Virus record (IMG/VR): IMGVR_UViG_3300009537_002640
Span: 124,001 to 188,000 of that record
Direction: 5' to 3' (one strand)
Length of the DNA: 64,000 bases
Shown here: piece by piece, positions 2,056 through 64,000 of the stretch
Layout: every line of letters begins with the position of its first letter
Position numbering within the stretch: position 1 is the stretch's first letter
Translations under genes and position numbers: made by a program
The notes under the pieces: model-generated
Told to the model about the DNA's origin: nothing
The model's input: the letters and a program-made list of their open reading frames with translations, nothing else
Database searches by the model: none

Positions 2056-2155
2056 TTTTACAACCTCTCTCTTGTTGGTAATTTTACCTAACCAGCTTGA
2101 AATCCTACAGGTTTAGGCATGCTTTGGATATACTACCATCTATATCTAATGGCAG

Positions 2156-2166
2156 AATATTAATAG
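2156..2166 (-). promoter_or_regulatory. Putative late promoter motif CTATTAATATT
   Basis: One of six intergenic copies of TA(C/T)TAATA, about 100 nt upstream of the sheath start. Confidence 0.6.
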
Positions 2167-2169
2167 ATT

Positions 2170-3599: not shown

Positions 3600-3610
3600 A
3601 TAGTCTAAAA

Positions 3611-33200: not shown

Positions 33201-35731
33201 AACGATTGAGAGCCATCTGCCACTAATAATTGCCCAGGAACTCCTACTTCACCAGTATCAGTAATAGACAGATATTCATCAGCAGCTTGTCGTATTCGCA
33301 ATGTGCCTTGCGATGTAACGCCAAAGTTCCAATCTCGCAATTCCCCCACATCAGTTTCATCAGGATTGGTTCTGATATGAAGTGAGCCTGGGCCTAGAAA
33401 TATGTCTTTCCATCGTAAGTCTTCGGTGCCTAATCCGTAAGCATCGTCTTGCACAGGATTCACATAACCATCAACGAGATTTTCTACTGTATTAGATATT
33501 AGATATCCATCTACCTCTAGAACCCCAACTATAAGCCTACCCGTTACAAAAGCGTCACCAGAAACAGAAAGTTCATATTCAGGGTTATCGAAACCTATCC
33601 CTATACGACCATTATCTACATATAATGAGCCTTCTGCAACATGTAATCGTGTTGCAGGAGAAGAAGTTCCTAAGCCAAGGCGATTATTCATTCTATCCCA
33701 ATAGAAGTCATTATCACCAGCAAGAGCCCTGGTTCCAGTAAAAAATGCTACATAGCCGTCAGCACTTTCGGTGGCGGTAGTATATCCATCTAGGTCTTTG
33801 GTTATAGTTTGAAGAGATTCGGTTAGGGCGCTGTTTATTAGGTCTCCACCAACACTTAGGTCACCAGCTATATCAACAGAATTATCGAAAAACGATTGCC
33901 CGCTTACAGCTAAAACATAGGGGGAAATAGTAGCACCACCAATACCCACTCGTTGGAAGTTGTCTATTCTAACTGCCTCGCTGCCACTAGTTATTAGAGA
34001 TATTTGGTTGGTAGTGTTAGCACCTATACCAGTTGTGGGATTATTGCGTCTAGGCAATAGGGTGGGATTCGTGCTAGATGCAGCCTCATTTAGTATAGAA
34101 CCACCTGTTGTTGTGGAACTTTGTATATAGCCAGCACCTATTATCCAGCTTTCGGACCCAGCGAATGTTAAGCTTATAAGGTCATCTGATGATTCATGTA
34201 TTCCAGTGTCGCCATCACCAAACACTATCGTTGGCTCATTTACAGCGGTTCCGCCAGGCACCAATATTCTATGACCAATAACCAAATTATTATTGGCTCG
34301 ATCAAAGTATAAATCATTGTCTCCACCTATAGTACCGTCACCAGTGAAGAAAGCCACATAACCATCCGCCCCTGCTGATGAAGTTACATATCCATCTAGA
34401 CCTTTAACTATAGTTTGTAATGCATCAGAGTGTTGTGTGTAGTGCTCAGATTCAGTAGACACCAGTCCTTGTAAATCAGACGATAGGGCATAACCATCCA
34501 GGGCGTCACGGATTTCCTGGCGCTGTTGTGAGCTATCAACCCAACGCTGGTCTTCTACCGTCGATAAAGCATATCCATCTAAATCCTTAGTTATAGATTC
34601 AATTGCACCAGCATGTTGTTGATAATGCTCTTGTTCTGTTTGATAAATACCCTGTAAGCTAAATGCATATCCGTCAGACGCATCGCGCAAATCCTGCAAT
34701 TGTTGACTACTATCAGACCACCTTTGGTCCTCAATAGAAGTCAGTGCATACCCATCAAGGTCACTTAATATAGTTTGAATGGCGACTGAAACTTGAGTAT
34801 GGTGTTCTTGCTCTGTTTGACCATAGCCATCTAGGTCTTTAAGTATAGTTTGTATGGTCTCAGCAATTTGTTGCTTATGTTCTTCTACAGTTTGAGCCAA
34901 TCCAGTGTCCGAAGAGTATCCGTCCAAGTTGGATATAATTGTTTGAATTGCTTCTGAATGCTGAGAATAGTGTTCTTGTTCTGTAGTAACCAATCCTTGC
35001 AGATCAGTATCTAAAGCATAGCCATCTAGAGAGTCTCTAATCTCTTGTAATTGTTGTGATGAATCAATCCATCTTTGATCTTCCACCACAACAGACGCAT
35101 AACCGTCTAGATCTTTACGAATAGTCTGCACTACATCACTGTGTTGTAAATAATGCTCTAATTCTGTTTGCACTTGTCCCTGTAGGTCAGATGCCAGAGC
35201 ATAACCATCTAATGCTGTTCGTATATCTTGTAATTGTTGTGAGGAATCAATCCAACGTTGATTCTCTATGGTGAGAATTGCATAACCATCTAAATCAGAT
35301 AAAATGATTTGCAATGCTTGTGAAAATTGTGTGTAATGTTCGCTTACAGTTTGATCTGACGCATAACCATCCAAAGCTCCGGGAGGGATTTCTGCTGTGC
35401 CATAACCATCTAGGTCTTTAAGTATAGTTTGGATTGCGCTAGATAATTGAGAATAGTGTTCACTTTCAGTTTGGTCAGTAGCGTATCCGTCTAATGCACC
35501 GCCAAAGTCCACATTAGTTTGGGTAATATCCTTAATGGTTCTTATGCCAGTAGAATCTTTGAAGACAATATTTTTGTCTTCATCGACAGTAATGTATACC
35601 TCGTCGCTACCCAGTCCTAACAGTCCTGCTGGGTTGTCCGTACCAATACCAACATAGCCATCAAGCCTATAAATATCACCCTGACTATTTATGGCCCATC
35701 TGGTAATACCTATAGCAGGAATAGTAGCCAT
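24296..35731 (-). CDS. Giant mosaic tail fibre protein (3811 aa)
   Basis: Recurrent fibre modules ('GIGTxxP..LxVxG', 'PTIxFGDGDTGFYE', 'DTGIG..ADQLSLIAGG.EG.RI') and C-terminal 'PRLTTTERDAL...GMVIFNT....QGWDGTTW'. Confidence 0.75.
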   Translation of the reverse strand: MATIPAIGITRWAINSQGDIYRLDGYVGIGTDNPAGLLGLGSDEVYITVDEDKNIVFKDSTGIRTIKDITQTNVDFGGALDGYATDQTESEHYSQLSSAIQTILKDLDGYGTAEIPPGALDGYASDQTVSEHYTQFSQALQIILSDLDGYAILTIENQRWIDSSQQLQDIRTALDGYALASDLQGQVQTELEHYLQHSDVVQTIRKDLDGYASVVVEDQRWIDSSQQLQEIRDSLDGYALDTDLQGLVTTEQEHYSQHSEAIQTIISNLDGYSSDTGLAQTVEEHKQQIAETIQTILKDLDGYGQTEQEHHTQVSVAIQTILSDLDGYALTSIEDQRWSDSSQQLQDLRDASDGYAFSLQGIYQTEQEHYQQHAGAIESITKDLDGYALSTVEDQRWVDSSQQRQEIRDALDGYALSSDLQGLVSTESEHYTQHSDALQTIVKGLDGYVTSSAGADGYVAFFTGDGTIGGDNDLYFDRANNNLVIGHRILVPGGTAVNEPTIVFGDGDTGIHESSDDLISLTFAGSESWIIGAGYIQSSTTTGGSILNEAASSTNPTLLPRRNNPTTGIGANTTNQISLITSGSEAVRIDNFQRVGIGGATISPYVLAVSGQSFFDNSVDIAGDLSVGGDLINSALTESLQTITKDLDGYTTATESADGYVAFFTGTRALAGDNDFYWDRMNNRLGLGTSSPATRLHVAEGSLYVDNGRIGIGFDNPEYELSVSGDAFVTGRLIVGVLEVDGYLISNTVENLVDGYVNPVQDDAYGLGTEDLRWKDIFLGPGSLHIRTNPDETDVGELRDWNFGVTSQGTLRIRQAADEYLSITDTGEVGVPGQLLVADGSQSLPGIAFISDPNTGIFNLSADQIGFATGGGARFKIVGNAFSGTTSNGPQMRNQPASTTSPVYAFSLDNDTGLGADTTTGDILSLIAGGVEGIRITESGTIVTNIYGDLIVDGYLAVHNSVGIQDNLIVDGNISLRDNQRLILNSNDDSDTYIHSTGSTLQFVHNGANVFQAAGGNSATFTTGLKTSNDMPLGVGIVSAAPVYWFEYNSGGTQFELWTTDGDGGGTDTLLLSVTDGTTDLDFNGNLITDSAVALQLGTSASSSHSLTSGSVIIGGALEVDGEVHFDAISRFYARPVTQDNVNFTFGSDDDVFIDWSTQQTEPTMVWALGDTAKSMIFTTHANTAVDHGHGAFADPTVIIHSNNDTSVNPNEYLLLTHNQSEGIVNTGLGSLALAAANNYLLYVTPNGDSGGTIDAYGDLQVQGNGRLIVSQINDATMPTIAFGDGDTGFYERVDDELDVAVAGNRRWVFQSNGQSGPSTSTAAGFPDTGAGPTTPTLLPSRFDSNTGIGHGGFPTQDQLSLIVGGYEGLRITGDLDVAGATVDAYGDLQVHGNSRLIVPSVNNASMPTIAFGDGDTGFYETSDDNLRIAIAGTSLWLANGSYLGSSNSSQPALSRVNASSTVPTLLPMWIDSNTGIGAAATDQLSLIAGGWEGLRITGDGSGGGTIDAYGNLQMQENARFILNLDTTADTYIKDTGGNMQFYHHNSLAFQANATTITFISNSVAYDDRRLGIGQNVGAGFITRYWWIYNSSSSELELWTTDGDGGGTDTLLLTVADGTTDINLLYDASVGGDLSIGGAILNNDLSETLQVITQALDGYGSGSITASEGADGYVAFFTSANSIAGDNDLFFDRTNNRLGIGTTSPSTLLEVAGQITVSPGSVSEPGFTFASDTDTGIYHVTTNTIGFTSGGTWAFGINTGLGLLSALSGGPVIRHVEATSTVPTITPHKQDLDTGLGRAGADQLSLIAGGVEGLRISESSGNITVSTDGYLSVGAGLGVIGQTAISGTLTMGNSLDMGSNSIVNVDLLSFDSASTYNIDLDTTDFVFTFNGTEAWRMSGGSFSAFSVGAQLLNETSSSTNPTIIPRKGSFGNGIGGAAGEVAIIVGGGSKIAAYSAAVVISQDTTFSSAGTASLPAINFGDTDTGFYESSDDVLAVSTLGSIRGSWDAGQYTTYVSIQADLTSGPALLRENAAATNPTLVPNKSDSNTGIGSSGADQLSMIAGGVESIRVEDGYVTVNGDTSLVGDSTITGSVYAQQIVLPTLDEPTNPAITFSNGTGIYASGATLRFATNNQAAWSISNSSSIFSAADSGARIQSGFGSTSVVSYGFNNDGDTGMYRATINQLGFVTGGTEAIRITDTQRVGISTNAPDALLHVAGDGYFDGYLMPRTDDMWGLGTPDLRWRDLYLGTDSIHIISTDAETTTGRDYSWKIEKTPGTTQGFLRLYAGSTPVISISPDARRVGFGEDPTVALANHSITTTGAINTASDYRIGTSSVLLRNSGNYVQYGTADVNEELRFRSGGVVNMTLSTTGEVGIGTGSPEAKLHVAGDGYFDGYLMPHTDNMWGLGTPDLRWRDLYLGPESLHIVSTTAEGRPNRTFTWSVTEDGSLCLSDDGVPVAEFNSSTGASFPAGGGGGGGISATEGADGYIAFFTGSDSIAGDNDLFWDRPNNRLGIGTTAPLNKLDVAGGVVIGSGDAGVDTAPTDGLHVEGRLFAGGGGGVATPGYSFHTATGTGMGIPFGSTSLAFSVSGNLKWTIDSSDRWFSSSGVVASAGGSASTPGYSFATASDFDTGMFRAGADILGFAAGGVEAFRITESGGSTDVNFPTGGTASTPTINFGDGDTGFYAALDNVLSLATGGSKIFDFSSIGMENVNTGGPGILNEISSATNPTLVPRRNDTDTGIGSAAANQLSLVAGGVEGIRITESGSATTVTMGASYGGTPSALYDDLTVQGGSNVGITIGSSTTGFGALLFADADSTWSGNIIFDHSTNQLEIGTAGSTRAYVSSTGLHVNTGSRFFVPQINAPSTPTITFGDGDSGFYESADDTIQISLGGFARFTWSGVNYSSTVSGGPSMRGFDATATTPTFNPDALDSGTGIGTAGTSQLSLIANNIEGIRIDATGSPFINVNGDLNVAGAINNDDLSETFQVILQALDGYGGGGGLTAEEGADGYVAFFTSSGTLAGDNDLYFDRVNNNLQLNHRLIFPNTTGVEGFSSPTIGFGSSGNTGFNAFSDTVIGVSISGSNAWSFTSSEFGSAAGGGNLSASSPSDTNASVRTGSGINSGLGAGGSIYNLSAIVDGQEALRFTRNTEGDNSTVDAYGDVNIQGGGRLFVADGTSVLPSISFLSDTDTGIYRIGSNRLGFSTGSGVKAEVDSEGIVLWPDPGVVKALGTRDINIDAGGSVSLIGNSIEGLRITSGSGQPTIDAYGDLQVQGGSRLIVPSVNNEAIPTIAFGDGDTGFFELTDDAVYFSSVGTSRWWASFDDLAAAQSTRGWHMRNEISTATNPVYCFRFDLDTGVGSGAADAISLIAGGVEGLTITETGGATAVNIPGAGSETTPLLNLGDGDTGWWEASDDVLALSTAGSEVMRIDSLGFIAIGHTTTGIWDWSMRKTTVGSVVANIANLDSGSSSHARLDLATSGGDPYISLSGGDLWYVGLDRSLGGEFVIGDSSIPGGNIRMRIGPTGGDAGIAAAPAATWDVQQANDGAYTDIRVYNTNSTAGSDSVFLAEAQSAGGDPKLELSVSATQDWTVGIDNDDSEAFKIGSNATVGTNTHLTIDTSGNIGIGQAPVTGSKLSLPSENDAATPTISFGDGDTGFYETQDDTIGIAALGINAFFINASQISGATSGSGTVMNEAASATNPTLVPAWSDYDTGIGSAGANELSLITAGAEQVNIASDGYTTFSSGISVGGDSGIDGNLDVGNELTVGSVFLPPRLTTTERDALEPIEGMVIFNTSTKKHQGWDGTTWNDFY
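34360..35510 (-). repeat. Tandem coding repeats (about 25-35 aa) each ending in LDGY
   Basis: Alternating 'TExEHYxQHSxAIQTIxKDLDGY' and 'EDQRWxDSSQQLQExRxALDGY' units; about 14 units. Confidence 0.9.
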
Positions 35732-35745
35732 GTATATTAAGTCTC

Positions 35746-36258
35746 CTAATCAGTTTCCATTAATTCCTCTTTCTTGTCTTTACGGTCCTTTCCATCTATA
35801 TCGTGATAGTCTAATAAACCATCAACATAATCTTCAGCCTTTGCAGGAGACTCGTCGCGCTTTTTATAATCCACCTGAGACTGAAATGCTTCCATTTCTG
35901 TTTCTCTATCTAAATATTCTTTTTCCCCTTTATTAGGGTCAACATTGTCAGTGAATTGCTGAAGGAAGTGCACCAGTTCGTGCACCAGATAGTGAGTAGG
36001 ATCCTGTCCCTTTTCTACTAGCTTCTTATTAATGTAAATCTTCTTGTCTTTAGTTTTTGCTGATACATCTAAATCAGCAAATTCTACAGGCACATCATCT
36101 ATCTTGGATAGCGGGACATTATACTTGTCAAATTTTTCTTTAACCTCAGGATCAGATTTTATCTTATCTTTCATCTTCTGAACCAGCTTGGTCCAATCCG
36201 GTCCCGCCCTCTTCGAGATTCTGGTTATTGTCTGGTGTCTCTTCGACAGTTTGCGCAT
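35746..36258 (-). CDS. Zinc metallopeptidase-like protein (HExxH)
   Basis: 'KIYIN...YLVHELVHFLQ...EYLDRETEMEAF' gives HExxH plus a downstream Glu. The likely start is ATG 36258 (alternative GTG 36267). Confidence 0.65.
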   Translation of the reverse strand: MRKLSKRHQTITRISKRAGPDWTKLVQKMKDKIKSDPEVKEKFDKYNVPLSKIDDVPVEFADLDVSAKTKDKKIYINKKLVEKGQDPTHYLVHELVHFLQQFTDNVDPNKGEKEYLDRETEMEAFQSQVDYKKRDESPAKAEDYVDGLLDYHDIDGKDRKDKKEELMETD

Positions 36259-36427
36259 CTTTTTCACCCATCAAGTATAGTTGTCTGCTTTGCTCTAAGC
36301 TAGCTATTCGAGATTGGGCTGCCGCAACTGCTGTCTTTAATCCCAAAATCTCTAACTCTAATTCATCCATTGTTTCTGGTTGGCGATAACCTACATATTC
36401 TACAAAAACTTTCTCTGGCTTTCTCAT
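36164..36427 (-). CDS. Hypothetical coiled-coil protein
   Basis: 87 aa with GGAG RBS; its acidic tail overlaps the next gene by about 95 nt. Confidence 0.5.
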   Translation of the reverse strand: MRKPEKVFVEYVGYRQPETMDELELEILGLKTAVAAAQSRIASLEQSRQLYLMGEKDAQTVEETPDNNQNLEEGGTGLDQAGSEDER

Positions 36428-57429: not shown

Positions 57430-58455
57430 TTAGCCTGCTGCTACATCCTTACGGCCAACTGCTACACCACGTGGGTTGACAATACCGATTCCGATATTTT
57501 CGTTCACGACCCAACCTAGCTTGAGCTGCTTGGGCTCATCAGCTGGGAGAACTTCAATATCTTGACGGATTGGCATTACACCAACGAACTCAGGGTCAGC
57601 AACACCGAAGATAGTTCCAACAGGAACAATCTTAGAAACGATGATGTCTGCGCCCCAAAGGTGTGCAAAAAGACCAGTCTGTAGGATTTCACGCTGAGTG
57701 ACCATATCTACCTCTCCACCAGTGCCAGCTGCCTGACCACCGCCAGAGCCCCAGTTTAGAATATCGTTGAACTCAACGATGTTCATTAGGAACTTGGTAG
57801 TTACTAGGTCCCAACGGTCTACCTGAACTTTAATCTCAGAGAGATCGCGCTTTAGAAGACCTGCATCCGCGATATCCTGTGCAGTATTCTCGCCACCGAG
57901 AGAATCATCACCTGCGAAATCCAGAGCTGCGAAGATGTTGGCATCCTCTTGTGCCTGAATTTCCTGACGTGCTTTCTGCTGGGCACGGTCGATGACGTTA
58001 AATCTACGACGCTTCACCTCAGAAATACGTACAGTTGGGTTTGAAACAATCTCAAACTCAGGGACTGTTACACGGTCTGCGAAGACACGAGACTCGGGTG
58101 CGGAGCCGTTGCTAGAAATAACAACTGCGCTCACATCGATATCACGGTCATACACAGGCAGTGCACCTTGTGGTAGGGGGTCTACGACTAGAACTCGACG
58201 ACCGACGCCTTGGTAATCCAAGTTACGACGAATTGGGTTCGCCATAGCCTGACCAAGAGCAACCTTTCCTTCCTGAGTCATAAGAGCACGACGAACTAGC
58301 TCGTCCTTCTGCTCCTCTGTGAAAGAAGGCTGACCAGCAAGATTCTGGTTAGCCGATTGGTTCTGCTGGATGATAGACGCAAACTTTACAATCTGCGCTA
58401 ACGCATCACGACTATCAACTGCGTTCAACTCCCCATGTGTATTAAACATACTCAT
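57430..58455 (-). CDS. Major capsid protein (HK97-fold, encapsulin-like)
   Basis: 'LGQAMANPIRRNLDYQGVGRRVLVVDPLPQGALPVYDRD', 'PEFEIVSNPTVRISEVKRRRFNVIDRAQQKARQEIQAQED', 'GWVVNENIGIGIVNPRGV'. Start reassigned to ATG 58455 (GGAGGT RBS); followed by a terminator. Confidence 0.85.
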   Translation of the reverse strand: MSMFNTHGELNAVDSRDALAQIVKFASIIQQNQSANQNLAGQPSFTEEQKDELVRRALMTQEGKVALGQAMANPIRRNLDYQGVGRRVLVVDPLPQGALPVYDRDIDVSAVVISSNGSAPESRVFADRVTVPEFEIVSNPTVRISEVKRRRFNVIDRAQQKARQEIQAQEDANIFAALDFAGDDSLGGENTAQDIADAGLLKRDLSEIKVQVDRWDLVTTKFLMNIVEFNDILNWGSGGGQAAGTGGEVDMVTQREILQTGLFAHLWGADIIVSKIVPVGTIFGVADPEFVGVMPIRQDIEVLPADEPKQLKLGWVVNENIGIGIVNPRGVAVGRKDVAAG

Positions 58456-58659
58456 GAAAGTACCTCCAAAAATTAACCTACGGCTCTTCTGGTCGTATAT
58501 TGGTCCGTCCCATAAGAGTCCATAGAGTATCAATTAGTTTTGATTTTCTTCGTCGGTATAACCGACAGGTGCACAACGAAGTCAAATCAGGTCTTACAGA
58601 GAATCGAAATGTGGGGCCGGGCAATACCAGCCCCACAATCGTATTTAGCTTAAGCTATG

Positions 58660-59373
58660 TTATGCGTTGTGAGTTGCACCGAGATACTGGAACTTAACTC
58701 GGTCAAATGTCTCAGCAGCACCAACTAGCTTGCCAGGGGTGGTTACTAGAGATCCACTACCTGAGGTTTCTACAAACATACCGATTTTGTCAGCTGCCGC
58801 GACTGCCGCAGTAGACACGCTGAGCTTACCTGAAGTAGGCTCACGGTATAGTAGGTCACCTGGTAGAGGAGTATCATTTAGGCCACCGGGTCCACCTGGG
58901 CTACCAGATGTATTTGGGTCTAGTGATGCATGTAGAGCATCGCTAGAAACCGCGTACAATCCTGGCTTGTCCCACGCTGTCACCTTACCAGAACCTGCTG
59001 CAGTGTGAGGTCCTAGCAAAGAACCGCCACTGGAAGTTGTGGTAGCAAGACCAACCGGCGTACCGATTAGCTCACCAAACAAGGTGCCATAGTGTGCCTG
59101 ACCGTCGTCTAGCAAGTAGAAAAGCTTACGAGTCTCAGTTGCAGTATCGGCGATACGAAGCACTGGACGACTTGCAGTAGGGGTACCTACGTCAACTTCG
59201 TCTGCAACGTAACCGTCGAGAACATCTGATGCTGCCTTTTCGCTTGCACTGTTGGTGCGAGATGCCTCGTCTAGAGTACCAACCTCACCGCCAAGGACGT
59301 TTGCTAGATCTGTGTCTAGGCAGTCAAACTGACCCAAAGGCTGAAGACCTGGCTGTAATAGATATAATGCCAT
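58660..59373 (-). CDS. Capsid accessory/decoration protein
   Basis: Directly upstream of the MCP; Gly-rich beta protein with 'AAGSGKVTAWDKPGLYAV'; start reassigned to ATG 59373 (GGAGG RBS). Confidence 0.6.
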   Translation of the reverse strand: MALYLLQPGLQPLGQFDCLDTDLANVLGGEVGTLDEASRTNSASEKAASDVLDGYVADEVDVGTPTASRPVLRIADTATETRKLFYLLDDGQAHYGTLFGELIGTPVGLATTTSSGGSLLGPHTAAGSGKVTAWDKPGLYAVSSDALHASLDPNTSGSPGGPGGLNDTPLPGDLLYREPTSGKLSVSTAAVAAADKIGMFVETSGSGSLVTTPGKLVGAAETFDRVKFQYLGATHNA

Positions 59374-59464
59374 TTTGTTATCCTCCAAATTAGTTTTTGG
59401 GTGGTAAATTCTCACTGACGAAGCAAATTCGATATAGAGAACAACCTTCTTATACTTACATCTA

Positions 59465-59475
59465 AATATTAGTAG
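59465..59475 (-). promoter_or_regulatory. Putative late promoter motif CTACTAATATT
   Basis: TA(C/T)TAATA copy about 90 nt upstream of the decoration-MCP unit. Confidence 0.6.
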
Positions 59476-59489
59476 ATTTCTTTCGCGAC

Positions 59490-61010
59490 TTAGTAGTTAT
59501 TTACTATGTTAAATGCTTCAATTAGGGTATTTCGGTCGGTTATTCGGCCATCTGGGGCTACTAAGGCACCAGTCCATTCGTCGGTTTTTGACCTTTTATT
59601 GAAGTCTTGCTCTAATCTTTTCAGGGTCTGTATCGTATTTCGGTCTACTCGTCCAGTTTGCTGTATACCCAAAAGACCTTGTATCTCAGAAACCTCATTC
59701 TTACCAGGCTCTTTAATGGTCATGCCAGGAGTCTTGGATATATCGGCTGAAACACCCAGTCGTTCTGCTAATCCTACCAAAGTATTAGTTGATTCTTGAA
59801 CAAAAGTAGTTATCTTCTGACCTAATTGTTTGGCTAATTCTGGATTATCGCTACCCTCTACAACCGTCTGCCAATCTCCAAGAGCGCCGTTGATGTCATT
59901 TATTTCTTTAGACATCTTAGTTACATACATCTGGATTGCCCTTTCTGCATTTTCGCCTTTCAGAGCACTATCTACACCTGCAGAAAGTCTTGCCATATCG
60001 GATAAGGAGCCTTTAGCTTCATTAACCACTACCCTTCCTCTACCAGATACTTCTAACCTGGATAATTCAGAGGAAAGCCCATTGCTTGCTTTGCTATTTT
60101 CTGCTGGAGGGTTATCGTCAAACCAACTATATATCTTTAACAACGCTGCCCCACCTGCCAATGCTGCAGCGGACAACCCTAATCTCCTTGCAGTATCACC
60201 CACAGTTAGACCCATAATTTTCTGTCGAGTGGTTAGCTTTCCACCGCCTGCAATTAGGTCTGCTATTTTGTCTTTTGACATTAGCTTACTTAGTCGAGCG
60301 TTATTCTGAGGATTAGCCAGCCACAATTCCAATTGACGAGATGCCGCAGGATTCCTCTTAAGAGCTATATATTTTCTCACGAATGCCGTGTCAGAACCAG
60401 ATGTGGTTTGCTTCATAATATTCTGTGTCAGATTGAAAGCCTCTTCGTATTTTCCTCGTGCTTGTGCAACACCAGGATGAGTCATTGGGGCATCTGAGGA
60501 GCGTAATACATCAAGAGCACCTCTTACATTACCACTATTAGCATTTTGCCATGCACCAGATAGAGTTTCCATCAACTTTTGATTCTCAGTCACTCTACCC
60601 TGCAAGTCCATCAGCATCTGTTCTGCTTGTTCATGTGCAACTTGGTCTAATTGTTGTGGGTCTACTTTTTTCGTAGGATAAACAGTTCTAGTAAGCCTTT
60701 GAATTTCTCGCTGGTCTTCTAGAATTTCAGCCCTAAGTCTTTGCAAAGCTTTAGATAAGTCGCCGTGTCCAGAGCGAACAAGCTTTGTAACCTCTGCTCC
60801 AGCTTTTTCTCCGAGGTCACTAACCTGTTTAAAATCAGTCACAAGCTTTTCAGCCATTCGGGCAGCACCCTCTGCACTTTCTTCAACTGCTTCTTTTCCA
60901 GCGCGAGCCCACCATTTAGCAGATGCACGAGCAAGATCATCGCTGGCACTACCAAATGCTTTAGCAACAGCTTTAGCTACTGGGCTTACCAACTTTCTAA
61001 GTAGGCCCAC
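59490..61010 (-). CDS. Putative internal head/ejection protein with a C-terminal peptidoglycan-binding-like domain; probably made as a -1 frameshift fusion with the upstream ORF
   Basis: Helical protein with hydrophobic 'LGLSAAALAGGAALL' and 'VSEIQGLLGIQQTGRVDRNTIQTL'; the GTG start has no SD, and the frame stays open upstream through a slippery site. Confidence 0.55.
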   Translation of the reverse strand: MGLLRKLVSPVAKAVAKAFGSASDDLARASAKWWARAGKEAVEESAEGAARMAEKLVTDFKQVSDLGEKAGAEVTKLVRSGHGDLSKALQRLRAEILEDQREIQRLTRTVYPTKKVDPQQLDQVAHEQAEQMLMDLQGRVTENQKLMETLSGAWQNANSGNVRGALDVLRSSDAPMTHPGVAQARGKYEEAFNLTQNIMKQTTSGSDTAFVRKYIALKRNPAASRQLELWLANPQNNARLSKLMSKDKIADLIAGGGKLTTRQKIMGLTVGDTARRLGLSAAALAGGAALLKIYSWFDDNPPAENSKASNGLSSELSRLEVSGRGRVVVNEAKGSLSDMARLSAGVDSALKGENAERAIQMYVTKMSKEINDINGALGDWQTVVEGSDNPELAKQLGQKITTFVQESTNTLVGLAERLGVSADISKTPGMTIKEPGKNEVSEIQGLLGIQQTGRVDRNTIQTLKRLEQDFNKRSKTDEWTGALVAPDGRITDRNTLIEAFNIVNNY

Positions 61011-61051
61011 AGGTATAGCTGTTTTATGTAGTGGACTTACCCGACTGCTGA

Positions 61052-61582
61052 TTACCCTTCGTCTGTCGGTGCCTCGTCGAAAGGGGGGCCAGCCTCCTCT
61101 GCAAGTAGAGCTTCTAGTTCAGCATCTATGTTGTCTGCAGAATCATTCATGGCACTCAGTGTATCAGACATCTGGGTCACAACTCTTTTCGCTGCATCAG
61201 TTAGAGAGTTAGCTACATCAGTTGCACCAACTTCTTCTGCAGCTTCAGCCATTTTTACTAGACGAACAACAGTATGAGCATATCTACCCACCAAGGAGCC
61301 GGTTGGGCTTTTATTCAACATTTCTATGAGCTTCTTCTGCTGCTCTACTTGATTTTCTACCAAGCCACCATCACCGCGAGCTTCTGCAACATAGACTGGC
61401 TCTGGATGAGCCTCCTCTATTATGCTCTTCTCTGGCTGGTCTAGTCTCTTCTTTCGGATAGTTTCTACATCCTCTTGGTAAGGATTAGGCTCTGGTAATG
61501 CGGTCTTCTTAAGACCTAAGACATTAGTTTCAGAAGCAATCTTTAGAAACTCTATCATAACCTCGGAATTTTCCCAATTCAT
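61052..61582 (-). CDS. Putative internal head/scaffold-like protein
   Basis: 176 aa; N-terminal 'WENSEVMIEFLKIA' leader; motifs LKKTA and LVKMA. Confidence 0.55.
   Translation of the reverse strand: MNWENSEVMIEFLKIASETNVLGLKKTALPEPNPYQEDVETIRKKRLDQPEKSIIEEAHPEPVYVAEARGDGGLVENQVEQQKKLIEMLNKSPTGSLVGRYAHTVVRLVKMAEAAEEVGATDVANSLTDAAKRVVTQMSDTLSAMNDSADNIDAELEALLAEEAGPPFDEAPTDEG
61079..61085 (-). other. Putative -1 ribosomal frameshift heptamer C CCT TTC
   Basis: X XXY YYZ in the frame of 61052..61582; the -1 frame is that of 59490..61010; internal GGAGG at 61097-61093. Confidence 0.6.
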
Positions 61583-61584
61583 AT

Positions 61585-62193
61585 TTAGCTCCTTGGCCCC
61601 ATATATCCTTGGGGACCATAATTTTTCGGGTCTAGCGATGGGTCTTTTGGAAGAAACTGAAAAGCACCAGCCATCTCTTCACCCTTCTCTCTGGCACCCT
61701 CTTCATTTCCACTAGTAAACATATCGTAAATTTCGCCTATCTTGGTAAAGCCAAAAGCAAACAGTAGATACTTAGCTGCACGCCAAAGATTCTTTAGTAG
61801 TGCTCGTGGACTTATAACATATTTCCATATGAACTTAAGCACCACACTTGCGAACGCTTCCTTTACTATCTGGTTTTCCATAGAACTAGCGATTTTGTTT
61901 ATTCGTTCATCGTTTAGGTTGGCTGTTGCTGGCATTCCAAAAAGCTGTGTAGTAACACCTTGTTCATCGAGCCATCTACCAAAGTCCTCTAACCCATATC
62001 CGTAATTAGATAAAACTTTATCAAGGGCAGTTATCATCATTCCGCTCCAACCGAAAACAGATGGGGCGTATGATATCAATCTAAAAAGATTTTGCCCGGG
62101 GCCTTGATCGGTTCTCCACATACCTTGAACCATTTTCTTTATGCCTTCTGCAACAAATGCTCGTTTTGAAATATATCGCATAGCTTTGTCCAT
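61585..62193 (-). CDS. Putative internal head protein with hydrophobic helices
   Basis: Start reassigned to ATG 62193 (TAATG coupling); motifs ISKRA and IVKEA, each followed by an amphipathic/hydrophobic segment. Confidence 0.55.
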   Translation of the reverse strand: MDKAMRYISKRAFVAEGIKKMVQGMWRTDQGPGQNLFRLISYAPSVFGWSGMMITALDKVLSNYGYGLEDFGRWLDEQGVTTQLFGMPATANLNDERINKIASSMENQIVKEAFASVVLKFIWKYVISPRALLKNLWRAAKYLLFAFGFTKIGEIYDMFTSGNEEGAREKGEEMAGAFQFLPKDPSLDPKNYGPQGYMGPRS

Positions 62194-63830
62194 TATAGAA
62201 TCGAATTGCGTCCCTGAAAACGGCCATAGTTCCTCTTTACATAATCTTGTAGCATAGGCATGCTCCAATCAGATGGAGGGGGCAGTCCTCTTGGTCCCTT
62301 AAATACCTGTGACACCAGTCGCACTTGATTCTCTCTACTAAAACCCCTATTAGCTAGCCAAGTTTGTGCCGGTGTTCCATCAATAAACTTGTTATTGAGT
62401 GCAGCTAAAATTTCTGCACCTGTAGGGTTCCACTTATGAGGCTGCTCTTCAACATCATAGGTTCCGCCACCATACTGAACTCCAGTCTGTCGCTCTTGTG
62501 GAGCTGCACCAGGCTGAGTACTTTGTTGCACTGTCTGTGACAGAGTATTAACCTTTTGGCTTATAGCATTCAATACAGCAGGATTTTTACCAACTACCCT
62601 ATAGTCTGTTTGTGGCACATTCATCCACTGACGCAAACGAGGAGACGAATTCATAAATGTCTCCAGCGCCTTTTGAGTATTTGGTCCATAAATGCCGTCT
62701 TCATTGATTCTGCTTGCGCCAGTACTATATGCCTGGTTAAGATAGTTCAAAGACTGTTGCATGCTTGTTACGGCTGGATTCCTTCTGGACAATTGTCGCT
62801 GAGTCCTCTCTTTCTTAGCCGCTCCAGCTGGCCCCCTAAGAGTAACTTGAGTTCCGTCGCCAAGTGTTAGAGCGCGTTTAGACAACCGCTCCTTAGAGCT
62901 TGCTGTAGTAGCAGCAGTGCCTAAGGCTTTTTCAAACAAGCCATGAAGCATAACTAAACTCTGAACGTTGTTCTTAACATCTTCAAGAGTTGCACTCTTT
63001 GATGCCAACGCTTCTGCCAAGTTGTATCCTGCTTCTTCGCTCTTATTATCGAATTTAGGAGGTCCGCCAAAGCGCTCAGAAAGCTGGTCATACATAGATT
63101 TTACTTTCTGCCCAAGCTCAGCAAGGTCCTTATTTAAAGTCTGCCCATATTCCTCGACAGCTTTCTGCATAACGGCCTTTTGTTCAGATGCTGCTTTTTC
63201 TTTTAGCTGTAACATAGCAGTTAGTGTCTTATCAATTGCCTGTTCAGCCTGCTCAGCATCACCAGATATCAAACCACCATAACCCCAATCGGTAAGTTTT
63301 GGCTTCAATTGCGTAGGAAACCACTCCTTAAGGCTAACAAGATACTTTGTAAGTTCTGTTAGAGCATTAAGCTTACCTTTGGTTTGTTGAAGTTTCTCTT
63401 CCTCAGACTCAGGAACATCCTGAACGCCCATAGCCGCCTTAAACTCTTTTAGTTTGCCGGTGACTTTTTCTATCTGAGCTTTGGTTTGTTCGTCCTTAGG
63501 ATCTAAGTCCTCAAACCTTTCCACTAAATCATCCAAATTATCATCAGCCAGCTTAGTAGCCTGCCAAACAATAGTAGCTCCAAGAATAAGAGCCATTGCC
63601 GCCCAGCCTGCTGGTCCTGCAGGAGCAAACATTCCAGCTACTGCAGCGGCTTTACCGGTGACACCAAGAGCTAATGCGGCTTTAGCAGCACCAATAACTG
63701 CTGCCTCCGTAGCTACATTGCTTAATATAGCTTCGCCCCAGTCAGAACTAGCGGCTTCTTTCACTATAGCAGGGGCCATAGCAATACGCGCATATTCCTG
63801 CATGATTTCGCTATTTTCAAACTGAGACAT
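62193..63830 (-). CDS. Putative internal head/ejection protein with a Gly/Ala-rich hydrophobic hairpin and a peptidoglycan-binding domain
   Basis: Start ATG 63830 (GGAG RBS); 'VTSMQQSLNYL...EDGIYGPNTQKALETF' is a PG_binding_1-type motif; IVKEA and LSKRA motifs. Confidence 0.65.
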   Translation of the reverse strand: MSQFENSEIMQEYARIAMAPAIVKEAASSDWGEAILSNVATEAAVIGAAKAALALGVTGKAAAVAGMFAPAGPAGWAAMALILGATIVWQATKLADDNLDDLVERFEDLDPKDEQTKAQIEKVTGKLKEFKAAMGVQDVPESEEEKLQQTKGKLNALTELTKYLVSLKEWFPTQLKPKLTDWGYGGLISGDAEQAEQAIDKTLTAMLQLKEKAASEQKAVMQKAVEEYGQTLNKDLAELGQKVKSMYDQLSERFGGPPKFDNKSEEAGYNLAEALASKSATLEDVKNNVQSLVMLHGLFEKALGTAATTASSKERLSKRALTLGDGTQVTLRGPAGAAKKERTQRQLSRRNPAVTSMQQSLNYLNQAYSTGASRINEDGIYGPNTQKALETFMNSSPRLRQWMNVPQTDYRVVGKNPAVLNAISQKVNTLSQTVQQSTQPGAAPQERQTGVQYGGGTYDVEEQPHKWNPTGAEILAALNNKFIDGTPAQTWLANRGFSRENQVRLVSQVFKGPRGLPPPSDWSMPMLQDYVKRNYGRFQGRNSIL

Positions 63831-63841
63831 ATAGCTCTCCA

Positions 63842-64000
63842 TTAGATATTGATGAATTGCTTTATTTGATCAGGGGTTAGGCTTTTAACTGTTCCTGCAA
63901 ACTCCTGCTCTAATTTGCCCATTGCAGCTTCTGGGGTAAAGAAACGAATCATAGATTTATAAGATTCTCTAGCCCTAGTACGCAAAGCTTGTTCTAATTC
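63842..64000 (-). CDS. 3' end of an upstream gene (partial)
   Basis: Open frame ELEQALRTRARESYKSMIRFFTPE...KQFINI* ending at TAA 63844-63842. Confidence 0.6.
   Translation of the reverse strand, partial: ELEQALRTRARESYKSMIRFFTPEAAMGKLEQEFAGTVKSLTPDQIKQFINI

What the first reader, a model, noticed from the sequence alone, without database searches (positions are those of the whole stretch)
57430..63830. [ILF]-x-K-x-A motif restricted to head proteins: candidate prohead protease site
Seen: IVKEA and LSKRA (62193..63830); ISKRA and IVKEA (61585..62193); FLKIA, LKKTA and LVKMA (176 aa); LHKTA (frameshift linker); IVKFA near the MCP N-terminus; ISKRA (HExxH protein). They tend to sit near N-termini or at domain boundaries, often just before hydrophobic segments. 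These proteins lack DGY, so the two tags partition inside from outside. Known: T4 and phiKZ prohead proteases cut many internal proteins at short motifs ending in Glu. Inference: an analogous protease cutting after K-x-A and releasing several mature peptides from precursors.
Basis: partly seen in the sequence, partly recalled or inferred. Interest (0 to 1): 0.7.

Follow-up and report, generated by a model that had tools for sequence, protein, structure and literature searches.

The report
Head-protein leader and protease-site motif
A short Ile/Leu/Phe-x-Lys-x-Ala signature, often closing a shared N-terminal leader, marks the head-module proteins of this large uncultured phage and its relatives, and is most likely where the phage's capsid-maturation protease trims them: a new variant of a known phage strategy, not yet shown by experiment.

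Summary
All ten listed motif instances exist at the stated places. "Restricted to head proteins" is wrong: 41 of 68 genome-wide matches lie elsewhere, at chance frequency. The enrichment is real. Head module: 27 hits against 9.6 expected. First 45 residues of head proteins: 10 against about 1. 319 head-module ORFs of related contigs: 148 N-terminal hits against 22. Same-residue patterns in other orders are not enriched.

The motif is kept in 61/61 MCP relatives and 5/5 homologues of the 549-aa protein, as [IL]SKRA in a variable linker. It is also kept in 7/7 versions of a trans-frame linker made by a conserved -1 frameshift.

The protease is the N-terminal domain of a 1342-aa protease-scaffold fusion outside the window. 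It has a T4 gp21/herpesvirus-assemblin fold and 35% identity to phage G gp19.

Three head proteins share an N-terminal leader ending in the motif, like the T4 capsid-targeting sequence.

Best reading (0.6): leader plus protease site, cut probably after Ala. The register is unresolved. The HExxH-protein instance is not conserved. By homology with phage G, the mature MCP may start at residue 69, not 27. No proteomic data exist, as the phage appears uncultured. New variant of a known kind.

The parts
57430..58455 (-). Major capsid protein gene (341 aa from the ATG at 58455; the TTG at 58533 given by the ORF finder is an over-extension)
   Evidence: phrog_2522, E 1e-78. 53% identity to phage G gp27 and PDB 6wkk. 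All relatives start at MS[ML]FNTHGE.
58378..58392 (-). IVKFA, MCP residues 22-26: candidate site ending a 26-aa N-terminal leader
   Evidence: [IL]-x-K-[YFL]-A is kept in 61 of 61 unique aligned relatives, followed by S/A/T/G.
58249..58263 (-). VALG|Q, MCP residues 65-69: position homologous to the phage G mature MCP N-terminus (alternative or additional cut)
   Evidence: Phage G MCP goes from 282 to 255 aa by N-terminal sequencing (PMC5646251, Table 1). Alignment.
59490..61010 (-). 506-aa ORF (GTG start as called), probably made only or mainly as the C-terminal part of a frameshift fusion with the 176-aa protein
   Evidence: Its frame is open upstream to the slippery site. Orthologues L005_6739 and L007_4645 are in-frame fusions.
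61017..61031 (-). LHKTA in the trans-frame linker (VSPLHKTA|IPVGLL)
   Evidence: VSPL-x-K-x-A is conserved in 7 of 7 fused or split relatives. In the split ones it lies upstream of any start codon.
61079..61085 (-). Slippery heptamer C CCT TTC for a -1 programmed frameshift (zero-frame codons cct ttc = Pro-Phe)
   Evidence: Relatives carry C CCT TTA, C CCT TTT, C CCT TTC or T TTT TTC at the aligned place, always with a -1 frame relation.
61052..61582 (-). 176-aa head protein: leader at residues 3-32 (nt 61487..61576), FLKIA (61535..61549), LKKTA (61499..61513), LVKMA (61247..61261)
   Evidence: Leader HMM built from relatives only, E 2e-7. FLKIA kept in 20/37, LVKMA in 21/36 and LKKTA in 5/32 aligned homologues. 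Phage G gp20 has LKKTA|L at residues 8-12.
61585..62193 (-). 202-aa head protein: ISKRA (62158..62172), INKIA (61888..61902), IVKEA (61855..61869)
   Evidence: Homologues keep LSKRA|F and ITKTA; L006 has LIKYA|F at the N-terminus.
62193..63842 (-). 549-aa head protein with a weak C-terminal match to a peptidoglycan-binding domain: leader at residues 8-21 (63780..63821), IVKEA (63753..63767), LSKRA (62871..62885)
   Evidence: Leader HMM, E 3e-4. N-terminal motif kept in 4/4, directly before the conserved W-x-W-x-D. Internal [IL]SKRA[LV] kept in 5/5 at 26-32% overall identity. PG_binding_1 at residues 355-396, E 1e-3 and 19.7 bits, below Pfam's 23-bit cut-off.
63842..64000 (-). 3' end of the 540-aa head-protein gene (63842..65464); its leader and LVKQA/LLKEA lie outside the window
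   Evidence: Leader HMM, E 6e-10. LVKQA kept in 6/13 aligned homologues; LLKEA not conserved.
35746..36267 (-). 173-aa HExxH protein (Pfam Peptidase_M91, E 1e-5, just above the cut-off) with ISKRA at 36205..36219: a weak candidate
   Evidence: Homologues have ISKRD, ISNRE or nothing at this place; only L018 has LVKIA.
58660..59415 (-). 251-aa protein next to the MCP (function unknown): negative control without the N-terminal motif
   Evidence: 2 of 66 unique homologues have the motif in the first 60 aa. It contains one DGY.

Best explanation
The signature [I/L/F]-x-K-x-A is most likely the recognition and cleavage site of this phage's own prohead (capsid-maturation) serine protease.

The protease is the N-terminal domain (about residues 46-255) of a 1342-aa protease-scaffold fusion. 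It is encoded about 5.4 kb to the right of the window (genome 193256..197284).

In several head-interior proteins the site closes a shared 20-30-residue N-terminal leader, x(2-8)-S-E-[IV]-M-x-E-[FY]-x-[KR]-I-A ... [IL]-x-K-x-A. This leader probably acts like the T4 capsid-targeting sequence, carrying the protein into the assembling prohead. The protease then removes it.

The same site separates domains:
- the linker before the (weakly matched) peptidoglycan-binding domain of the 549-aa protein;
- the trans-frame linker of the frameshift fusion of the 176-aa and 506-aa proteins;
- the boundaries of the 1290-aa topoisomerase IB / VanY-like / LigT protein.

It is also frequent in the scaffold part of the protease fusion, which would be degraded. 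The cut is probably after the Ala (P5 hydrophobic, P3 Lys, P1 Ala).

Shown: presence, enrichment, conservation, protease identity and fold, the shared leader, and the frameshift signals. Inferred: that cleavage occurs, by which enzyme, and at which bond.
For: 1. Enrichment that composition does not explain, in the genome itself and in 319 unique head-module ORFs of related contigs: 148 N-terminal hits against 22.3 +- 4.5. Permuted patterns are not enriched. F.K.A and L.K.A are among the top three gapped triplets in an unbiased count; the other top ones come from one conserved family.

2. Conservation of K and A with variable x positions in proteins that are otherwise 25-35% identical. MCP 61/61; 549-aa protein N-terminal 4/4 and internal [IL]SKRA 5/5; protease N-terminus 3/3; F-x-K-x-A in most of the 134 representatives at 50% clustering that could be anchored.

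3. The sites sit where cuts make sense: ends of leaders of varying length, directly before conserved mature starts (W-x-W-x-D), and linkers between domains.

4. The linker motif VSPL-x-K-x-A is encoded in the -1 frame, upstream of any start codon, in 5 split versions. It is in frame in 2 fused orthologues.

5. The protease: phrog_18299 E 1e-15; 35% identity to phage G gp19; AF2 model pLDDT 88, with best Foldseek matches T4 gp21 (5jbl, probability 1.00) and then herpesvirus proteases; invariant His139 and Ser190.

6. The scaffold part of 136 homologous fusions carries 1005 motifs against 326 +- 17 expected. The folded part of the MCP is depleted, 3 against 17.2 +- 4.1.

7. A leader HMM built from relatives alone finds exactly three proteins in the genome, all at their N-termini and all in the head module.

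8. Phage G has the motif near the N-termini of portal gp14, protease gp19 and gp20 (LKKTA|L, identical to the 176-aa protein's).

9. For the register after Ala:
- Phage G's sequenced mature MCP implies a cut after Ala (..VALA|Q) (PMC5646251).
- Ala is replaced only by Ser, while Lys is sometimes V, N or R at aligned sites.
- The residue after Ala is small in all MCPs.
- Herpesvirus assemblins, which have the same fold, cut Ala|Ser. This is established knowledge; the substrate Asn-Ala-Ser-Ser appears in PMC13486704.
Against: - No protein-level data exist. The contig appears to come from a metagenome: only weak partial holders, all labelled metagenome or soil metagenome.
- The docking test of protease and linker peptide gave no answer.
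- The one experimentally anchored site in a relative (phage G MCP) is not a K-x-A site. It aligns to residue 68/69 of this MCP, so Lys at P3 is not obligatory, or a second specificity exists.
- In many leaders and in the protease N-terminus the motif lies in a predicted amphipathic helix (residues 28-41 of the AF2 model). That fits a binding element as well as a cleavage site.
- Several instances are not conserved: LLKEA in the 540-aa protein, FTKVA and IVKGA in the protease fusion, ISKRA in the HExxH protein.
- The relatives are phylogenetically related, so the shuffle statistics overstate independence.
- More distant members of the protease family (mycobacteriophage Myrna) lack the N-terminal motif.
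Confidence: 0.6

Rival explanations
1. The motif is the core of a binding helix. It acts as a capsid-, scaffold- or protease-targeting signal, like an encapsulin cargo-loading peptide or the non-cleaved part of the T4 targeting sequence. It is conserved for docking and is not itself cut; any proteolysis happens elsewhere (for example at small-residue sites such as VALG|Q).
For: - In the leaders the first copy sits in a conserved amphipathic stretch, S-E-[IV]-M-x-E-F-x-K-I-A-x-E-x-G-L.
- In the protease the F-x-K-x-A lies in a predicted helix (residues 28-41) conserved in most of 134 representatives.
- The only sequenced terminus in a relative (phage G MCP) is not at a K-x-A (PMC5646251).
Against: - The internal invariant [IL]SKRA lies in variable, low-complexity linkers.
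- The linker of the frameshift fusion and the domain boundaries of the 1290-aa protein are not natural places for a targeting helix.
- Tandem copies occur.
- There is a threefold excess across the scaffold region and depletion in the folded MCP.
- Both fit a destructive site better than a docking site.
Confidence: 0.2
2. It is the prohead-protease site, but the bond cut is after the Lys: [ILF]-x-K|x-A, with P3 hydrophobic and P1 Lys. This would be a charge-swapped copy of T4's [LI]-x-E| and would match HK97's F-N-K|S. The predicted mature termini would then start two residues earlier (FASIIQ, EAASSD, RAFVAE).
For: - Known prohead and assemblin proteases put a hydrophobic or small residue at P3 and the key residue at P1. 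T4 uses L/I-x-E and phiKZ/SPN3US use S/A/G-x-E (PMC5694885, PMC10052503). HK97 cuts after Lys103 and herpesviruses use V/L-x-A (both from general knowledge).
- The i, i+2, i+4 spacing fits either register.
- Lys is invariant in the best-conserved sites.
Against: - At aligned sites the Lys is sometimes V, N or R while Ala stays: LSVRA here against ISKRA in L084, LMVTA here against MVKTA in L005, and ARIA/ANIA in leaders.
- Ala is replaced only by Ser.
- Phage G's MCP terminus implies P1 = Ala.
- The residue after Lys is large and variable, unlike the small P1' usual in this protease family.
Confidence: 0.2
3. Another enzyme makes the cuts. Candidates are the trypsin-like serine protease encoded in the same module (236 aa, genome 200045..200755) or a host protease, as with the host Prp that trims staphylococcal phage 80alpha head proteins.
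For: A Trypsin_2 domain protein (E 5e-15) sits in the head gene block. A Lys-containing motif would suit a trypsin-like S1 pocket.
Against: - The 236-aa protein starts with a lipoprotein-type signal (hydrophobic stretch, then LTGC), so it should be exported rather than act in cytoplasmic proheads (read directly from the sequence).
- The motif extends to phage G, whose fetched head block (gp13-gp34) has no annotated trypsin-like protease (not searched for).
- The motif co-occurs with the assemblin-fold protease-scaffold family and is enriched inside that very protein.
Confidence: 0.05
4. There is no function: the pattern is a by-product of Lys/Ala-rich helical composition in head proteins.
For: The head proteins are rich in K, A, E and L. 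Low-complexity K/D/E triplets top the unbiased list in this genome.
Against: - Whole-protein and N-terminal-only shuffles.
- Permuted-order controls.
- Column-wise conservation in distant homologues, with variable x positions.
- Exact [IL]SKRA occurs six times; I estimate about 0.2 expected from rough residue frequencies, a hand calculation not run in a tool.
- Conservation in a trans-frame linker.
Confidence: 0.03

Closest known systems
Phage T4 prohead protease gp21 with the capsid-targeting sequence of internal proteins IPI-III (cut at [L/I]-x-E)
   Same: - A head-module serine protease of the same fold (best structural match 5jbl).
- Several internal head proteins share a short N-terminal leader that ends in the protease motif.
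- The scaffold is riddled with sites.
- The motif has a hydrophobic residue two positions before a charged one.
   Different: - The motif uses Lys and Ala instead of Glu.
- The leader is longer (20-30 aa) and unrelated in sequence.
- The protease is fused to a >1000-aa scaffold.
- Cleavage here is inferred, not shown.
phiKZ gp175 and SPN3US gp245 prohead proteases of giant phages (S/A/G-x-E motif; many head and ejection proteins processed)
   Same: A large phage with many head-interior proteins carrying N-terminal propeptides defined by one short motif, with multiple motif copies in propeptides (PMC10052503, PMC5694885).
   Different: - A different motif.
- An MCP of the phage G lineage of the HK97 fold (PMC5646251) rather than the phiKZ capsid proteins.
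- No sequence similarity between the substrates.
- Here the enzyme is part of a protease-scaffold fusion.
Herpesvirus pUL26 (assemblin fused to scaffold; R-site and M-site, cut at (V/L/I)-x-Ala|Ser)
   Same: - Architecture: an N-terminal protease fused in frame to the scaffold, self-released and degrading the scaffold (PMC4498786).
- Same fold.
- If the register after Ala is right, the same P1 = Ala with a small P1' residue.
   Different: - The herpes triad is Ser-His-His, and P3 is hydrophobic rather than Lys.
- The third catalytic residue was not identified here.
- Herpesviruses have no cargo leaders.
Bacillus phage G head module (gp14 portal, gp19 protease, gp20, gp27 MCP)
   Same: - The closest characterised relative: MCP 53% and protease 35% identical.
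- The motif lies near the N-termini of gp14, gp19 and gp20.
- The MCP loses an N-terminal propeptide (282 to 255 aa, PMC5646251).
   Different: - The G protease is a separate 300-aa protein, not fused to the scaffold.
- The G MCP lacks the 41-residue N-terminal extension that carries IVKFA, and its sequenced cut is not at a K-x-A.
- No shared leader was seen in G.
HK97 gp4 protease / gp5 delta-domain processing; P2 gpO protease-scaffold fusion
   Same: HK97-fold MCP lineage, an N-terminal MCP propeptide removed by a head-module serine protease, and an HK97 cut after F-N-K that fits [ILF]-x-K (general knowledge). P2 gpO is also a protease-scaffold fusion.
   Different: - No Pfam Peptidase_S78 match at E <= 0.01.
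- The MCP propeptide here is short (26 or 68 aa) and scaffolding is supplied in trans.
- Many cargo proteins are processed.

Membership tests
Prohead (capsid-maturation) serine proteases of the assemblin / T4 gp21 / HK97 gp4 fold | Assemblin-type fold | tested here: met
   AF2 model of residues 1-261: pLDDT 88, pTM 0.76. The top Foldseek PDB matches are T4 gp21 5jbl (E 7e-4, probability 1.00), then the EBV, HSV-2, PRV and KSHV proteases. TM-scores are modest (0.3-0.48).
Prohead (capsid-maturation) serine proteases of the assemblin / T4 gp21 / HK97 gp4 fold | Conserved catalytic His and Ser | tested here: inconclusive
   His139 (in C-K-D-H) and Ser190 (in V-S-M-G) are invariant in 37 sequences at 47-73% identity. 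They were not superposed on the gp21 or assemblin catalytic residues, and the third residue was not assigned.
Prohead (capsid-maturation) serine proteases of the assemblin / T4 gp21 / HK97 gp4 fold | Encoded in the head module near the scaffold and upstream of the MCP | tested here: met
   Genome 193256..197284, about 10.7 kb upstream of the MCP on the same strand and fused to a charged, coiled-coil-like C-terminal region. Homologues are annotated as head or capsid maturation protease and match phrog_18299.
Prohead (capsid-maturation) serine proteases of the assemblin / T4 gp21 / HK97 gp4 fold | Cleaves MCP, scaffold and internal proteins at a short motif | not testable with these tools
   Only sequence statistics and conservation are available. 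The complex prediction gave no answer.
T4-type capsid-targeting sequence (cleavable N-terminal leader of internal head proteins) | A short N-terminal sequence shared by several head-interior proteins of one phage | tested here: met
   An HMM built from relatives' leaders hits only the 540-, 176- and 549-aa proteins (E 6e-10, 2e-7, 3e-4), each at residues 3-36. The 130-aa protein has a similar G-[DN]-E-M-M leader.
T4-type capsid-targeting sequence (cleavable N-terminal leader of internal head proteins) | The leader ends in the prohead-protease motif | tested here: met
   The leaders end in [IL]-x-K-x-A in this phage and in most relatives, at variable distance. That this motif is the protease site remains the hypothesis under test.
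T4-type capsid-targeting sequence (cleavable N-terminal leader of internal head proteins) | The leader is sufficient to load a protein into proheads and is removed on maturation | not testable with these tools
   This needs fusion-protein packaging and virion proteomics.
T4 / phiKZ cleavage motif class (x-x-Glu|) | Glu at P1 | tested here: not met
   The conserved positions are Lys and Ala. [ILF].E.A is not enriched in relatives (157 against 404 for the K version).
-1 programmed ribosomal frameshift (176-aa / 506-aa pair) | X XXY YYZ slippery heptamer in the zero frame before the upstream stop, with the downstream ORF in the -1 frame | tested here: met
   C CCT TTC at 61079..61085. Four split relatives have C CCT TTA, C CCT TTT, C CCT TTC or T TTT TTC, all in the -1 relation.
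-1 programmed ribosomal frameshift (176-aa / 506-aa pair) | Coding conservation of the overlap, or fused orthologues | tested here: met
   Two orthologues are single ORFs of 751 and 643 aa. P-F-[DR]-[RS]-G-T and VSPL-x-K-x-A are conserved across fused and split forms.
-1 programmed ribosomal frameshift (176-aa / 506-aa pair) | Downstream stimulatory RNA structure | tested here: inconclusive
   The MFE of the 94 nt downstream is not different from shuffles (z = -0.32). Pseudoknots were not tested.

The most novel reading that the evidence does not exclude
A large, mostly uncultured clade of phage-G-like large phages may use a portable cargo-loading system. A 20-30-residue N-terminal leader plus a [ILF]-x-K-x-A site would be attached to varied cargo: peptidoglycan-binding proteins, a topoisomerase IB / VanY / LigT polyprotein, and a frameshift-made fusion that hitch-hikes a 500-aa protein on a small leader-bearing one.

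A protease-scaffold fusion built like herpesvirus pUL26, cutting after Ala as herpesvirus assemblins do, would release the cargo and destroy its own scaffold.

That would be a third, independent 'motif dialect' of prohead proteolysis beside the T4 and phiKZ classes. It would give a sequence rule for predicting the packaged proteome of hundreds of metagenomic large phages.
Probability: 0.35. Interest if true: 0.7.

Novelty: new variant of a known kind. Interest (0 to 1): 0.55.

Why it matters
If the motif is the protease site, it gives a simple rule for reading which proteins are packaged and processed in the heads of a very large, mostly uncultured phage clade. The protease family has 2156 representatives at 50% clustering (E <= 0.001), and the 150 best, nearly all protease-scaffold fusions, were examined. 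The rule would also predict the mature ends of those proteins.

It would extend the known 'leader plus short cleavage motif' logic of T4 and phiKZ to the phage G lineage with a different chemical code (Lys/Ala instead of Glu). It would also tighten the parallel between phage and herpesvirus protease-scaffold fusions.

The leader could serve as a tag for loading foreign proteins into large capsids.

The idea is directly testable in the cultivable relative phage G.

Tried and rejected
- **Complex prediction.** Protease domain (residues 46-261) with the 549-aa protein's linker peptide (306-337): verdict 'no answer', score 0.02. Not used as evidence either way.
- **Homologue searches in GenBank phages.** The 549-aa protein gave no tblastn match. 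Phage G head proteins other than gp19 and gp27 gave no match in this genome.
- **Phage G cryo-EM paper.** PMC7316594 is not held. The PDB entry 6wkk carries the near full-length sequence, so it does not show the mature terminus.
- **Solved structures and Pfam for the protease.** No meaningful sequence match in the PDB, and no Pfam family at E <= 0.01. Identity rests on PHROGs, homologues and fold.
- **Literature.** A search for a described K-x-A prohead motif found nothing.
- **Looking for the portal.** The ORF at the contig start is not a portal. The portal-like ORF of L084 has no counterpart in the held contig.
- **Identifying the phage from sequencing runs.** Only weak partial holders, in runs labelled metagenome or soil metagenome.
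- **Rejected readings.** Signal-peptidase or lipobox site: no hydrophobic H-region precedes the motif. Prp-type host cleavage (F|A in an L27-like leader): the pattern differs. Compositional artefact: see the controls.
- **More distant family member.** Mycobacteriophage Myrna was checked for the motif in its MCP, gp98 and protease fusion; it is absent at the N-termini.
- **Technical note.** A first alignment attempt timed out, and a gappy one was discarded.

Full report
**Setting**

The window is bases 124001-188000 of a single 206,495-bp contig. The contig has 42% G+C, and almost every gene is on the minus strand.

The flagged region (57430..63830) is the distal part of a head-gene block that runs rightwards out of the window.
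- The 341-aa ORF at 57430..58455 is the major capsid protein (MCP): phrog_2522, E 1e-78.
- Its nearest characterised relative is Bacillus phage G gp27 (53% identity; PDB 6wkk).
- The TTG start at 58533 reported by the ORF finder is an over-extension. All 80 related contigs begin at MS[ML]FNTHGE.
- Sequencing-run look-ups found only weak partial holders, labelled metagenome or soil metagenome, so the phage appears uncultured.
- The held contig seems incomplete. No portal gene was found, whereas a relative (L084) has a portal-like ORF directly upstream of the homologue of the last gene on the contig.

**Observation**

The claim of restriction to head proteins is not correct: the loose pattern [ILF]-x-K-x-A occurs 68 times in 66,308 residues, and 41 of these lie outside the head block.

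The two parts of the genome behave very differently.

| Region | Observed | Shuffle expectation |
|---|---|---|
| Outside the head block | 41 (0.70 per 1000 aa) | 34.3 +- 5.6 |
| Head block, MCP to contig end (21 proteins as called, 7905 aa) | 27 (3.42 per 1000 aa) | 9.6 +- 3.0 |
| First 45 residues of head-block proteins | 10 | 0.95-1.17 |

- For the N-terminal count, no shuffle among 2000-5000 reached 10, even when only the N-terminal residues were shuffled.
- Eight of 21 head proteins against five of 153 others have an N-terminal copy (Fisher 1e-5).
- Patterns with the same three residues in other orders or spacings occur 4-14 times in the head set, against 28 for the motif.
- The exact pentamer [IL]SKRA occurs six times. 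I estimate about 0.2 expected from rough residue frequencies; this is a hand calculation, not a tool result.

**Relatives**

A scan of viral contigs with the MCP gave 80 loci with 70-93% MCP identity, on contigs of up to 480 kb.
- In 319 unique ORFs upstream of the MCP (the head block) there are 148 motif hits in the first 60 residues, against 22.3 +- 4.5 after local shuffling.
- Beyond residue 60 the density is 2.9 per 1000 aa, against 0.71 in ORFs downstream of the MCP.
- The smaller downstream excess comes mostly from one conserved 236-aa family with two N-terminal copies.
- In an unbiased count of all X.Y.Z triplets in those N-termini, F.K.A and L.K.A rank second and third. The other top triplets all come from one conserved family.

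These sequences are related to each other, so the shuffle statistics overstate independence. The column-wise picture below is the more telling evidence.

**Conservation**

*MCP.* [IL]-x-K-[YFL]-A is kept in 61 of 61 unique aligned relatives. The x position varies (V, T, S, A) and a small residue follows.

*549-aa protein family* (26-32% identity overall).
- The N-terminal copy is kept in 4/4, directly before the conserved W-x-W-x-D, although the leader length varies.
- The internal copy is an island of identity, [IL]SKRA[LV], in 5/5. It lies in an otherwise unalignable low-complexity linker. That linker precedes a region with a weak, below-cut-off match to a peptidoglycan-binding domain (Pfam PG_binding_1, E 1e-3, 19.7 against 23 bits, residues 355-396).

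*202-aa protein.* ISKRA is matched by LSKRA|F and LIKYA|F in its two homologues.

*176-aa protein.* FLKIA is kept in 20/37, LVKMA in 21/36 and LKKTA in 5/32 aligned homologues.

*Not conserved:*
- LLKEA in the 540-aa protein;
- FTKVA and IVKGA in the protease fusion;
- ISKRA of the HExxH protein, whose homologues read ISKRD or ISNRE.

The HExxH protein (Pfam Peptidase_M91, E 1e-5) is therefore a weak candidate.

*Negative controls.* The 251-, 231- and 103-aa families lack an N-terminal copy in 64/66, 28/28 and 22/22 homologues.

**A shared leader**

The 176-, 540- and 549-aa proteins begin with the same kind of sequence. After two to eight residues comes S-E-[IV]-M-x-E-[FY]-x-[KRN]-I-A, then a short spacer, then [IL]-x-K-x-A. 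Many head-block ORFs of relatives start the same way.

An HMM built only from the relatives' leaders finds exactly these three proteins in the genome's ORF set. Each hit is at residues 3-36 (E 6e-10, 2e-7, 3e-4), and nothing else scores below E = 2. The 130-aa protein has a similar G-[DN]-E-M-M leader, whose closing site reads LMVTA here and MVKTA or LDKTA in relatives.

This mirrors the layout of the T4 internal proteins, whose capsid-targeting sequence ends in the gp21 site.

**The frameshift linker**

LHKTA (61017..61031) lies upstream of the first start codon of the 506-aa ORF, in the -1 frame relative to the 176-aa gene.
- The zero-frame codons ccc-cct-ttc contain the canonical heptamer C CCT TTC (61079..61085). 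A -1 slip there gives P-F-R-R-G-T ... V-S-P-L-H-K-T-A-I-P-V-G-L-L and a fusion of about 697 aa.
- In two relatives the two parts are one ORF (751 and 643 aa), with P-F-D-[RS]-G-T ... V-S-P-L-[HY]-K-E-A.
- In four others they are split, always in the -1 relation. Each has C CCT TTA, C CCT TTT, C CCT TTC or T TTT TTC just before the upstream stop, and VSPL-x-K-x-A encoded where no start codon precedes it.
- No significant downstream RNA structure was found (z = -0.32).

A plausible logic is that the small leader-bearing protein carries the 506-aa part into the prohead and the linker site releases it. That logic is inference.

**The protease**

The 1342-aa protein at genome 193256..197284 matches phrog_18299 (head maturation protease, E 1e-15) at residues 119-221. 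Over residues 14-254 it is 35% identical to phage G gp19.
- An exhaustive profile search found 2156 representatives at E <= 0.001. Nearly all of the best 150 are 1000-1600 aa long, so they are also protease-scaffold fusions.
- An AF2 model of residues 1-261 has pLDDT 88. It shows an N-terminal helix (28-41), a lower-confidence loop (42-50), and a beta-rich core.
- Its best PDB matches are T4 gp21 (5jbl, probability 1.00) and then five herpesvirus proteases.
- His139 and Ser190 are invariant. So are C136, C200, C203 and C214; H216 is conserved in the consensus. Together these suggest a zinc-binding insert, C-x-x-C ... C-x-H.
- The N-terminus reads F-V-K-L-A-K-K-L-K-R-I-A-P-R-A-S-D-F-L-Y. The consensus of 134 representatives is F-x-K-x-A-x-x-L-K-x-I-A-P-K-A-x-D-F-L-Y-F, and phage G gp19 has L-V-K-T-A-A-K-V-V-K-I-A-P-K-E-D-D-F-L-Y.
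- In 136 long homologues the region after the protease domain carries 1005 motifs against 326 +- 17 expected. Many have a copy 50-60 residues after the domain end, where a herpesvirus R-site would lie.
- Conversely, the folded part of the MCP is depleted (3 against 17.2 +- 4.1 in 62 relatives). Phylogenetic non-independence applies here too.

**Further cargo**

The 1290-aa protein at the contig end combines three domains:
- a type IB topoisomerase core (Pfam E 7.5e-31, residues 41-242);
- a weak VanY-like match (E 2e-3, below cut-off);
- a 2',5' RNA-ligase/LigT domain (residues 989-1118).

It has LSKRA at residues 4-8, at 1132-1136 (just after the LigT domain) and at 1264-1268.

Its one fetched homologue (43% identity) keeps ISKRA|KV-x-SDKPAY at the N-terminus. 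It also has ISKRA at an internal position, before a repeated segment, where this phage reads LSVRA. This looks like a polyprotein with protease-site separators.

**Phage G**

Besides gp19, the motif is near the N-terminus of portal gp14 (MAKQA|AS, residues 16-20). It is also in gp20, the gene after the protease (LKKTA|L at residues 8-12, identical to the copy in the 176-aa protein).

The G MCP, however, lacks the 41-residue extension that carries IVKFA. N-terminal sequencing gave a mature length of 255 of 282 residues (PMC5646251, Table 1). That implies a cut after ...V-A-L-A, before Q-A-M-A-N-P, which aligns with residues 68/69 of this MCP (V-A-L-G|Q).

Two consequences follow:
- The predicted SIIQQN terminus may be an intermediate only.
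- The best experimental anchor in the lineage has Ala at P1 but no Lys at P3.

**Mechanism and register**

The reading I favour is leader (targeting) plus site (cleavage) by the assemblin-fold protease.

*For a cut after Ala:*
- the phage G terminus;
- Ala is replaced only by Ser (IVKES, ISKRS, MQKIS), whereas Lys can be V, N or R at aligned sites (LSVRA, LMVTA, ANIA, ARIA);
- a small residue follows Ala in all MCPs;
- herpesvirus assemblins cut Ala|Ser (established knowledge; the substrate Asn-Ala-Ser-Ser is used in PMC13486704).

*For a cut after Lys:*
- the general P3-hydrophobic/P1-specific rule of T4 ([LI]-x-E) and HK97 (F-N-K|S, from memory).

I put about 0.55-0.6 on Ala and 0.35 on Lys, given that cleavage occurs at all.

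The main rival is that the motif, at least in the helical leader and the protease N-terminus, is a docking element rather than a scissile site. The linker and polyprotein copies argue against this as the sole function.

The complex prediction gave no answer, and no proteomic data exist.

**Comparison and novelty**

In function this resembles three known systems:
- T4 gp21 with its capsid-targeting sequence;
- the phiKZ/SPN3US system, in which many head proteins are trimmed at one short motif (PMC5694885, PMC10052503);
- herpesvirus pUL26, which it resembles in architecture (PMC4498786).

It fails the defining Glu-at-P1 feature of the T4/phiKZ motif class. It shows no Pfam S78 match. More distant members of the same protease family (mycobacteriophage Myrna gp97, a 1211-aa fusion annotated as tape measure) lack the N-terminal motif.

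I found no description of a K-x-A prohead motif. I rate it a new variant of a known kind: well supported by sequence evidence, unproven biochemically, and testable in phage G.

Noticed in passing
window 61079..61085 (slippery site), 59490..61582 (both ORFs): A conserved -1 programmed frameshift fuses the 176-aa and 506-aa head proteins into a product of about 697 aa. The heptamer is C CCT TTC. Two relatives have in-frame fusions. Four split relatives have their own slippery heptamers and a conserved trans-frame linker.
   Followed up: yes
genome 202093..205965 (L001:15093-18965, -), outside the window: A 1290-aa multi-domain protein in the head block: type IB topoisomerase core (Pfam E 7.5e-31), a weak VanY-like match and a 2',5' RNA-ligase/LigT domain. 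[IL]SKRA sits at the N-terminus and after the LigT domain. It looks like a packaged enzyme polyprotein.
   Followed up: partly
whole genome; e.g. window 24296..35731 (3811 aa) and genome 1490..12394 (3634 aa): The tripeptide DGY occurs 161 times against about 14 expected. There are 57 copies in the 3634-aa protein and 33 in the 3811-aa protein, and the rest are mostly in tail-region proteins. It is nearly absent from head-block proteins (one copy each in the 251- and 231-aa proteins).
   Followed up: partly
genome 193256..197284, protease domain residues 200-216: The protease domain carries an insert, C-x-x-C ... C-x-H. C200, C203, C214 and C136 are invariant and H216 is conserved in 37 homologues. 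This suggests a zinc-binding element that I am not aware of in T4 gp21 or the herpesvirus proteases.
   Followed up: no
genome 200045..200755 (L001:13045-13755, -): A trypsin-like serine protease (Pfam Trypsin_2, E 5e-15) with a lipoprotein-type signal (hydrophobic stretch, then LTGC) is encoded inside the head gene block.
   Followed up: no
contig ends; L084:1-1083: No portal gene is in the held 206-kb contig. In relative L084 a portal-like ORF (phrog_16240, E 8e-14) lies directly upstream of the homologue of the contig's last gene, so the contig is probably incomplete.
   Followed up: partly
L085 (Mycobacterium phage Myrna 46700..50335, gp97): Myrna gp97, annotated 'tape measure', is a 1211-aa protease-scaffold fusion homologous to the protease found here (tblastn E 1e-12).
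   Followed up: partly
L055:12967-13677 and homologues in about 15 related loci: A conserved 236-aa family about 2 kb downstream of the MCP in a subclade carries two N-terminal motif copies (LRKVA, F[TN]K[LM]A|FDTRR). It has no PHROG match and no counterpart was found in this window.
   Followed up: partly
window 57430..58533: The mechanical ORF call (TTG at 58533, 367 aa) over-extends the MCP gene. The conserved start is the ATG at 58455 (341 aa).
   Followed up: yes
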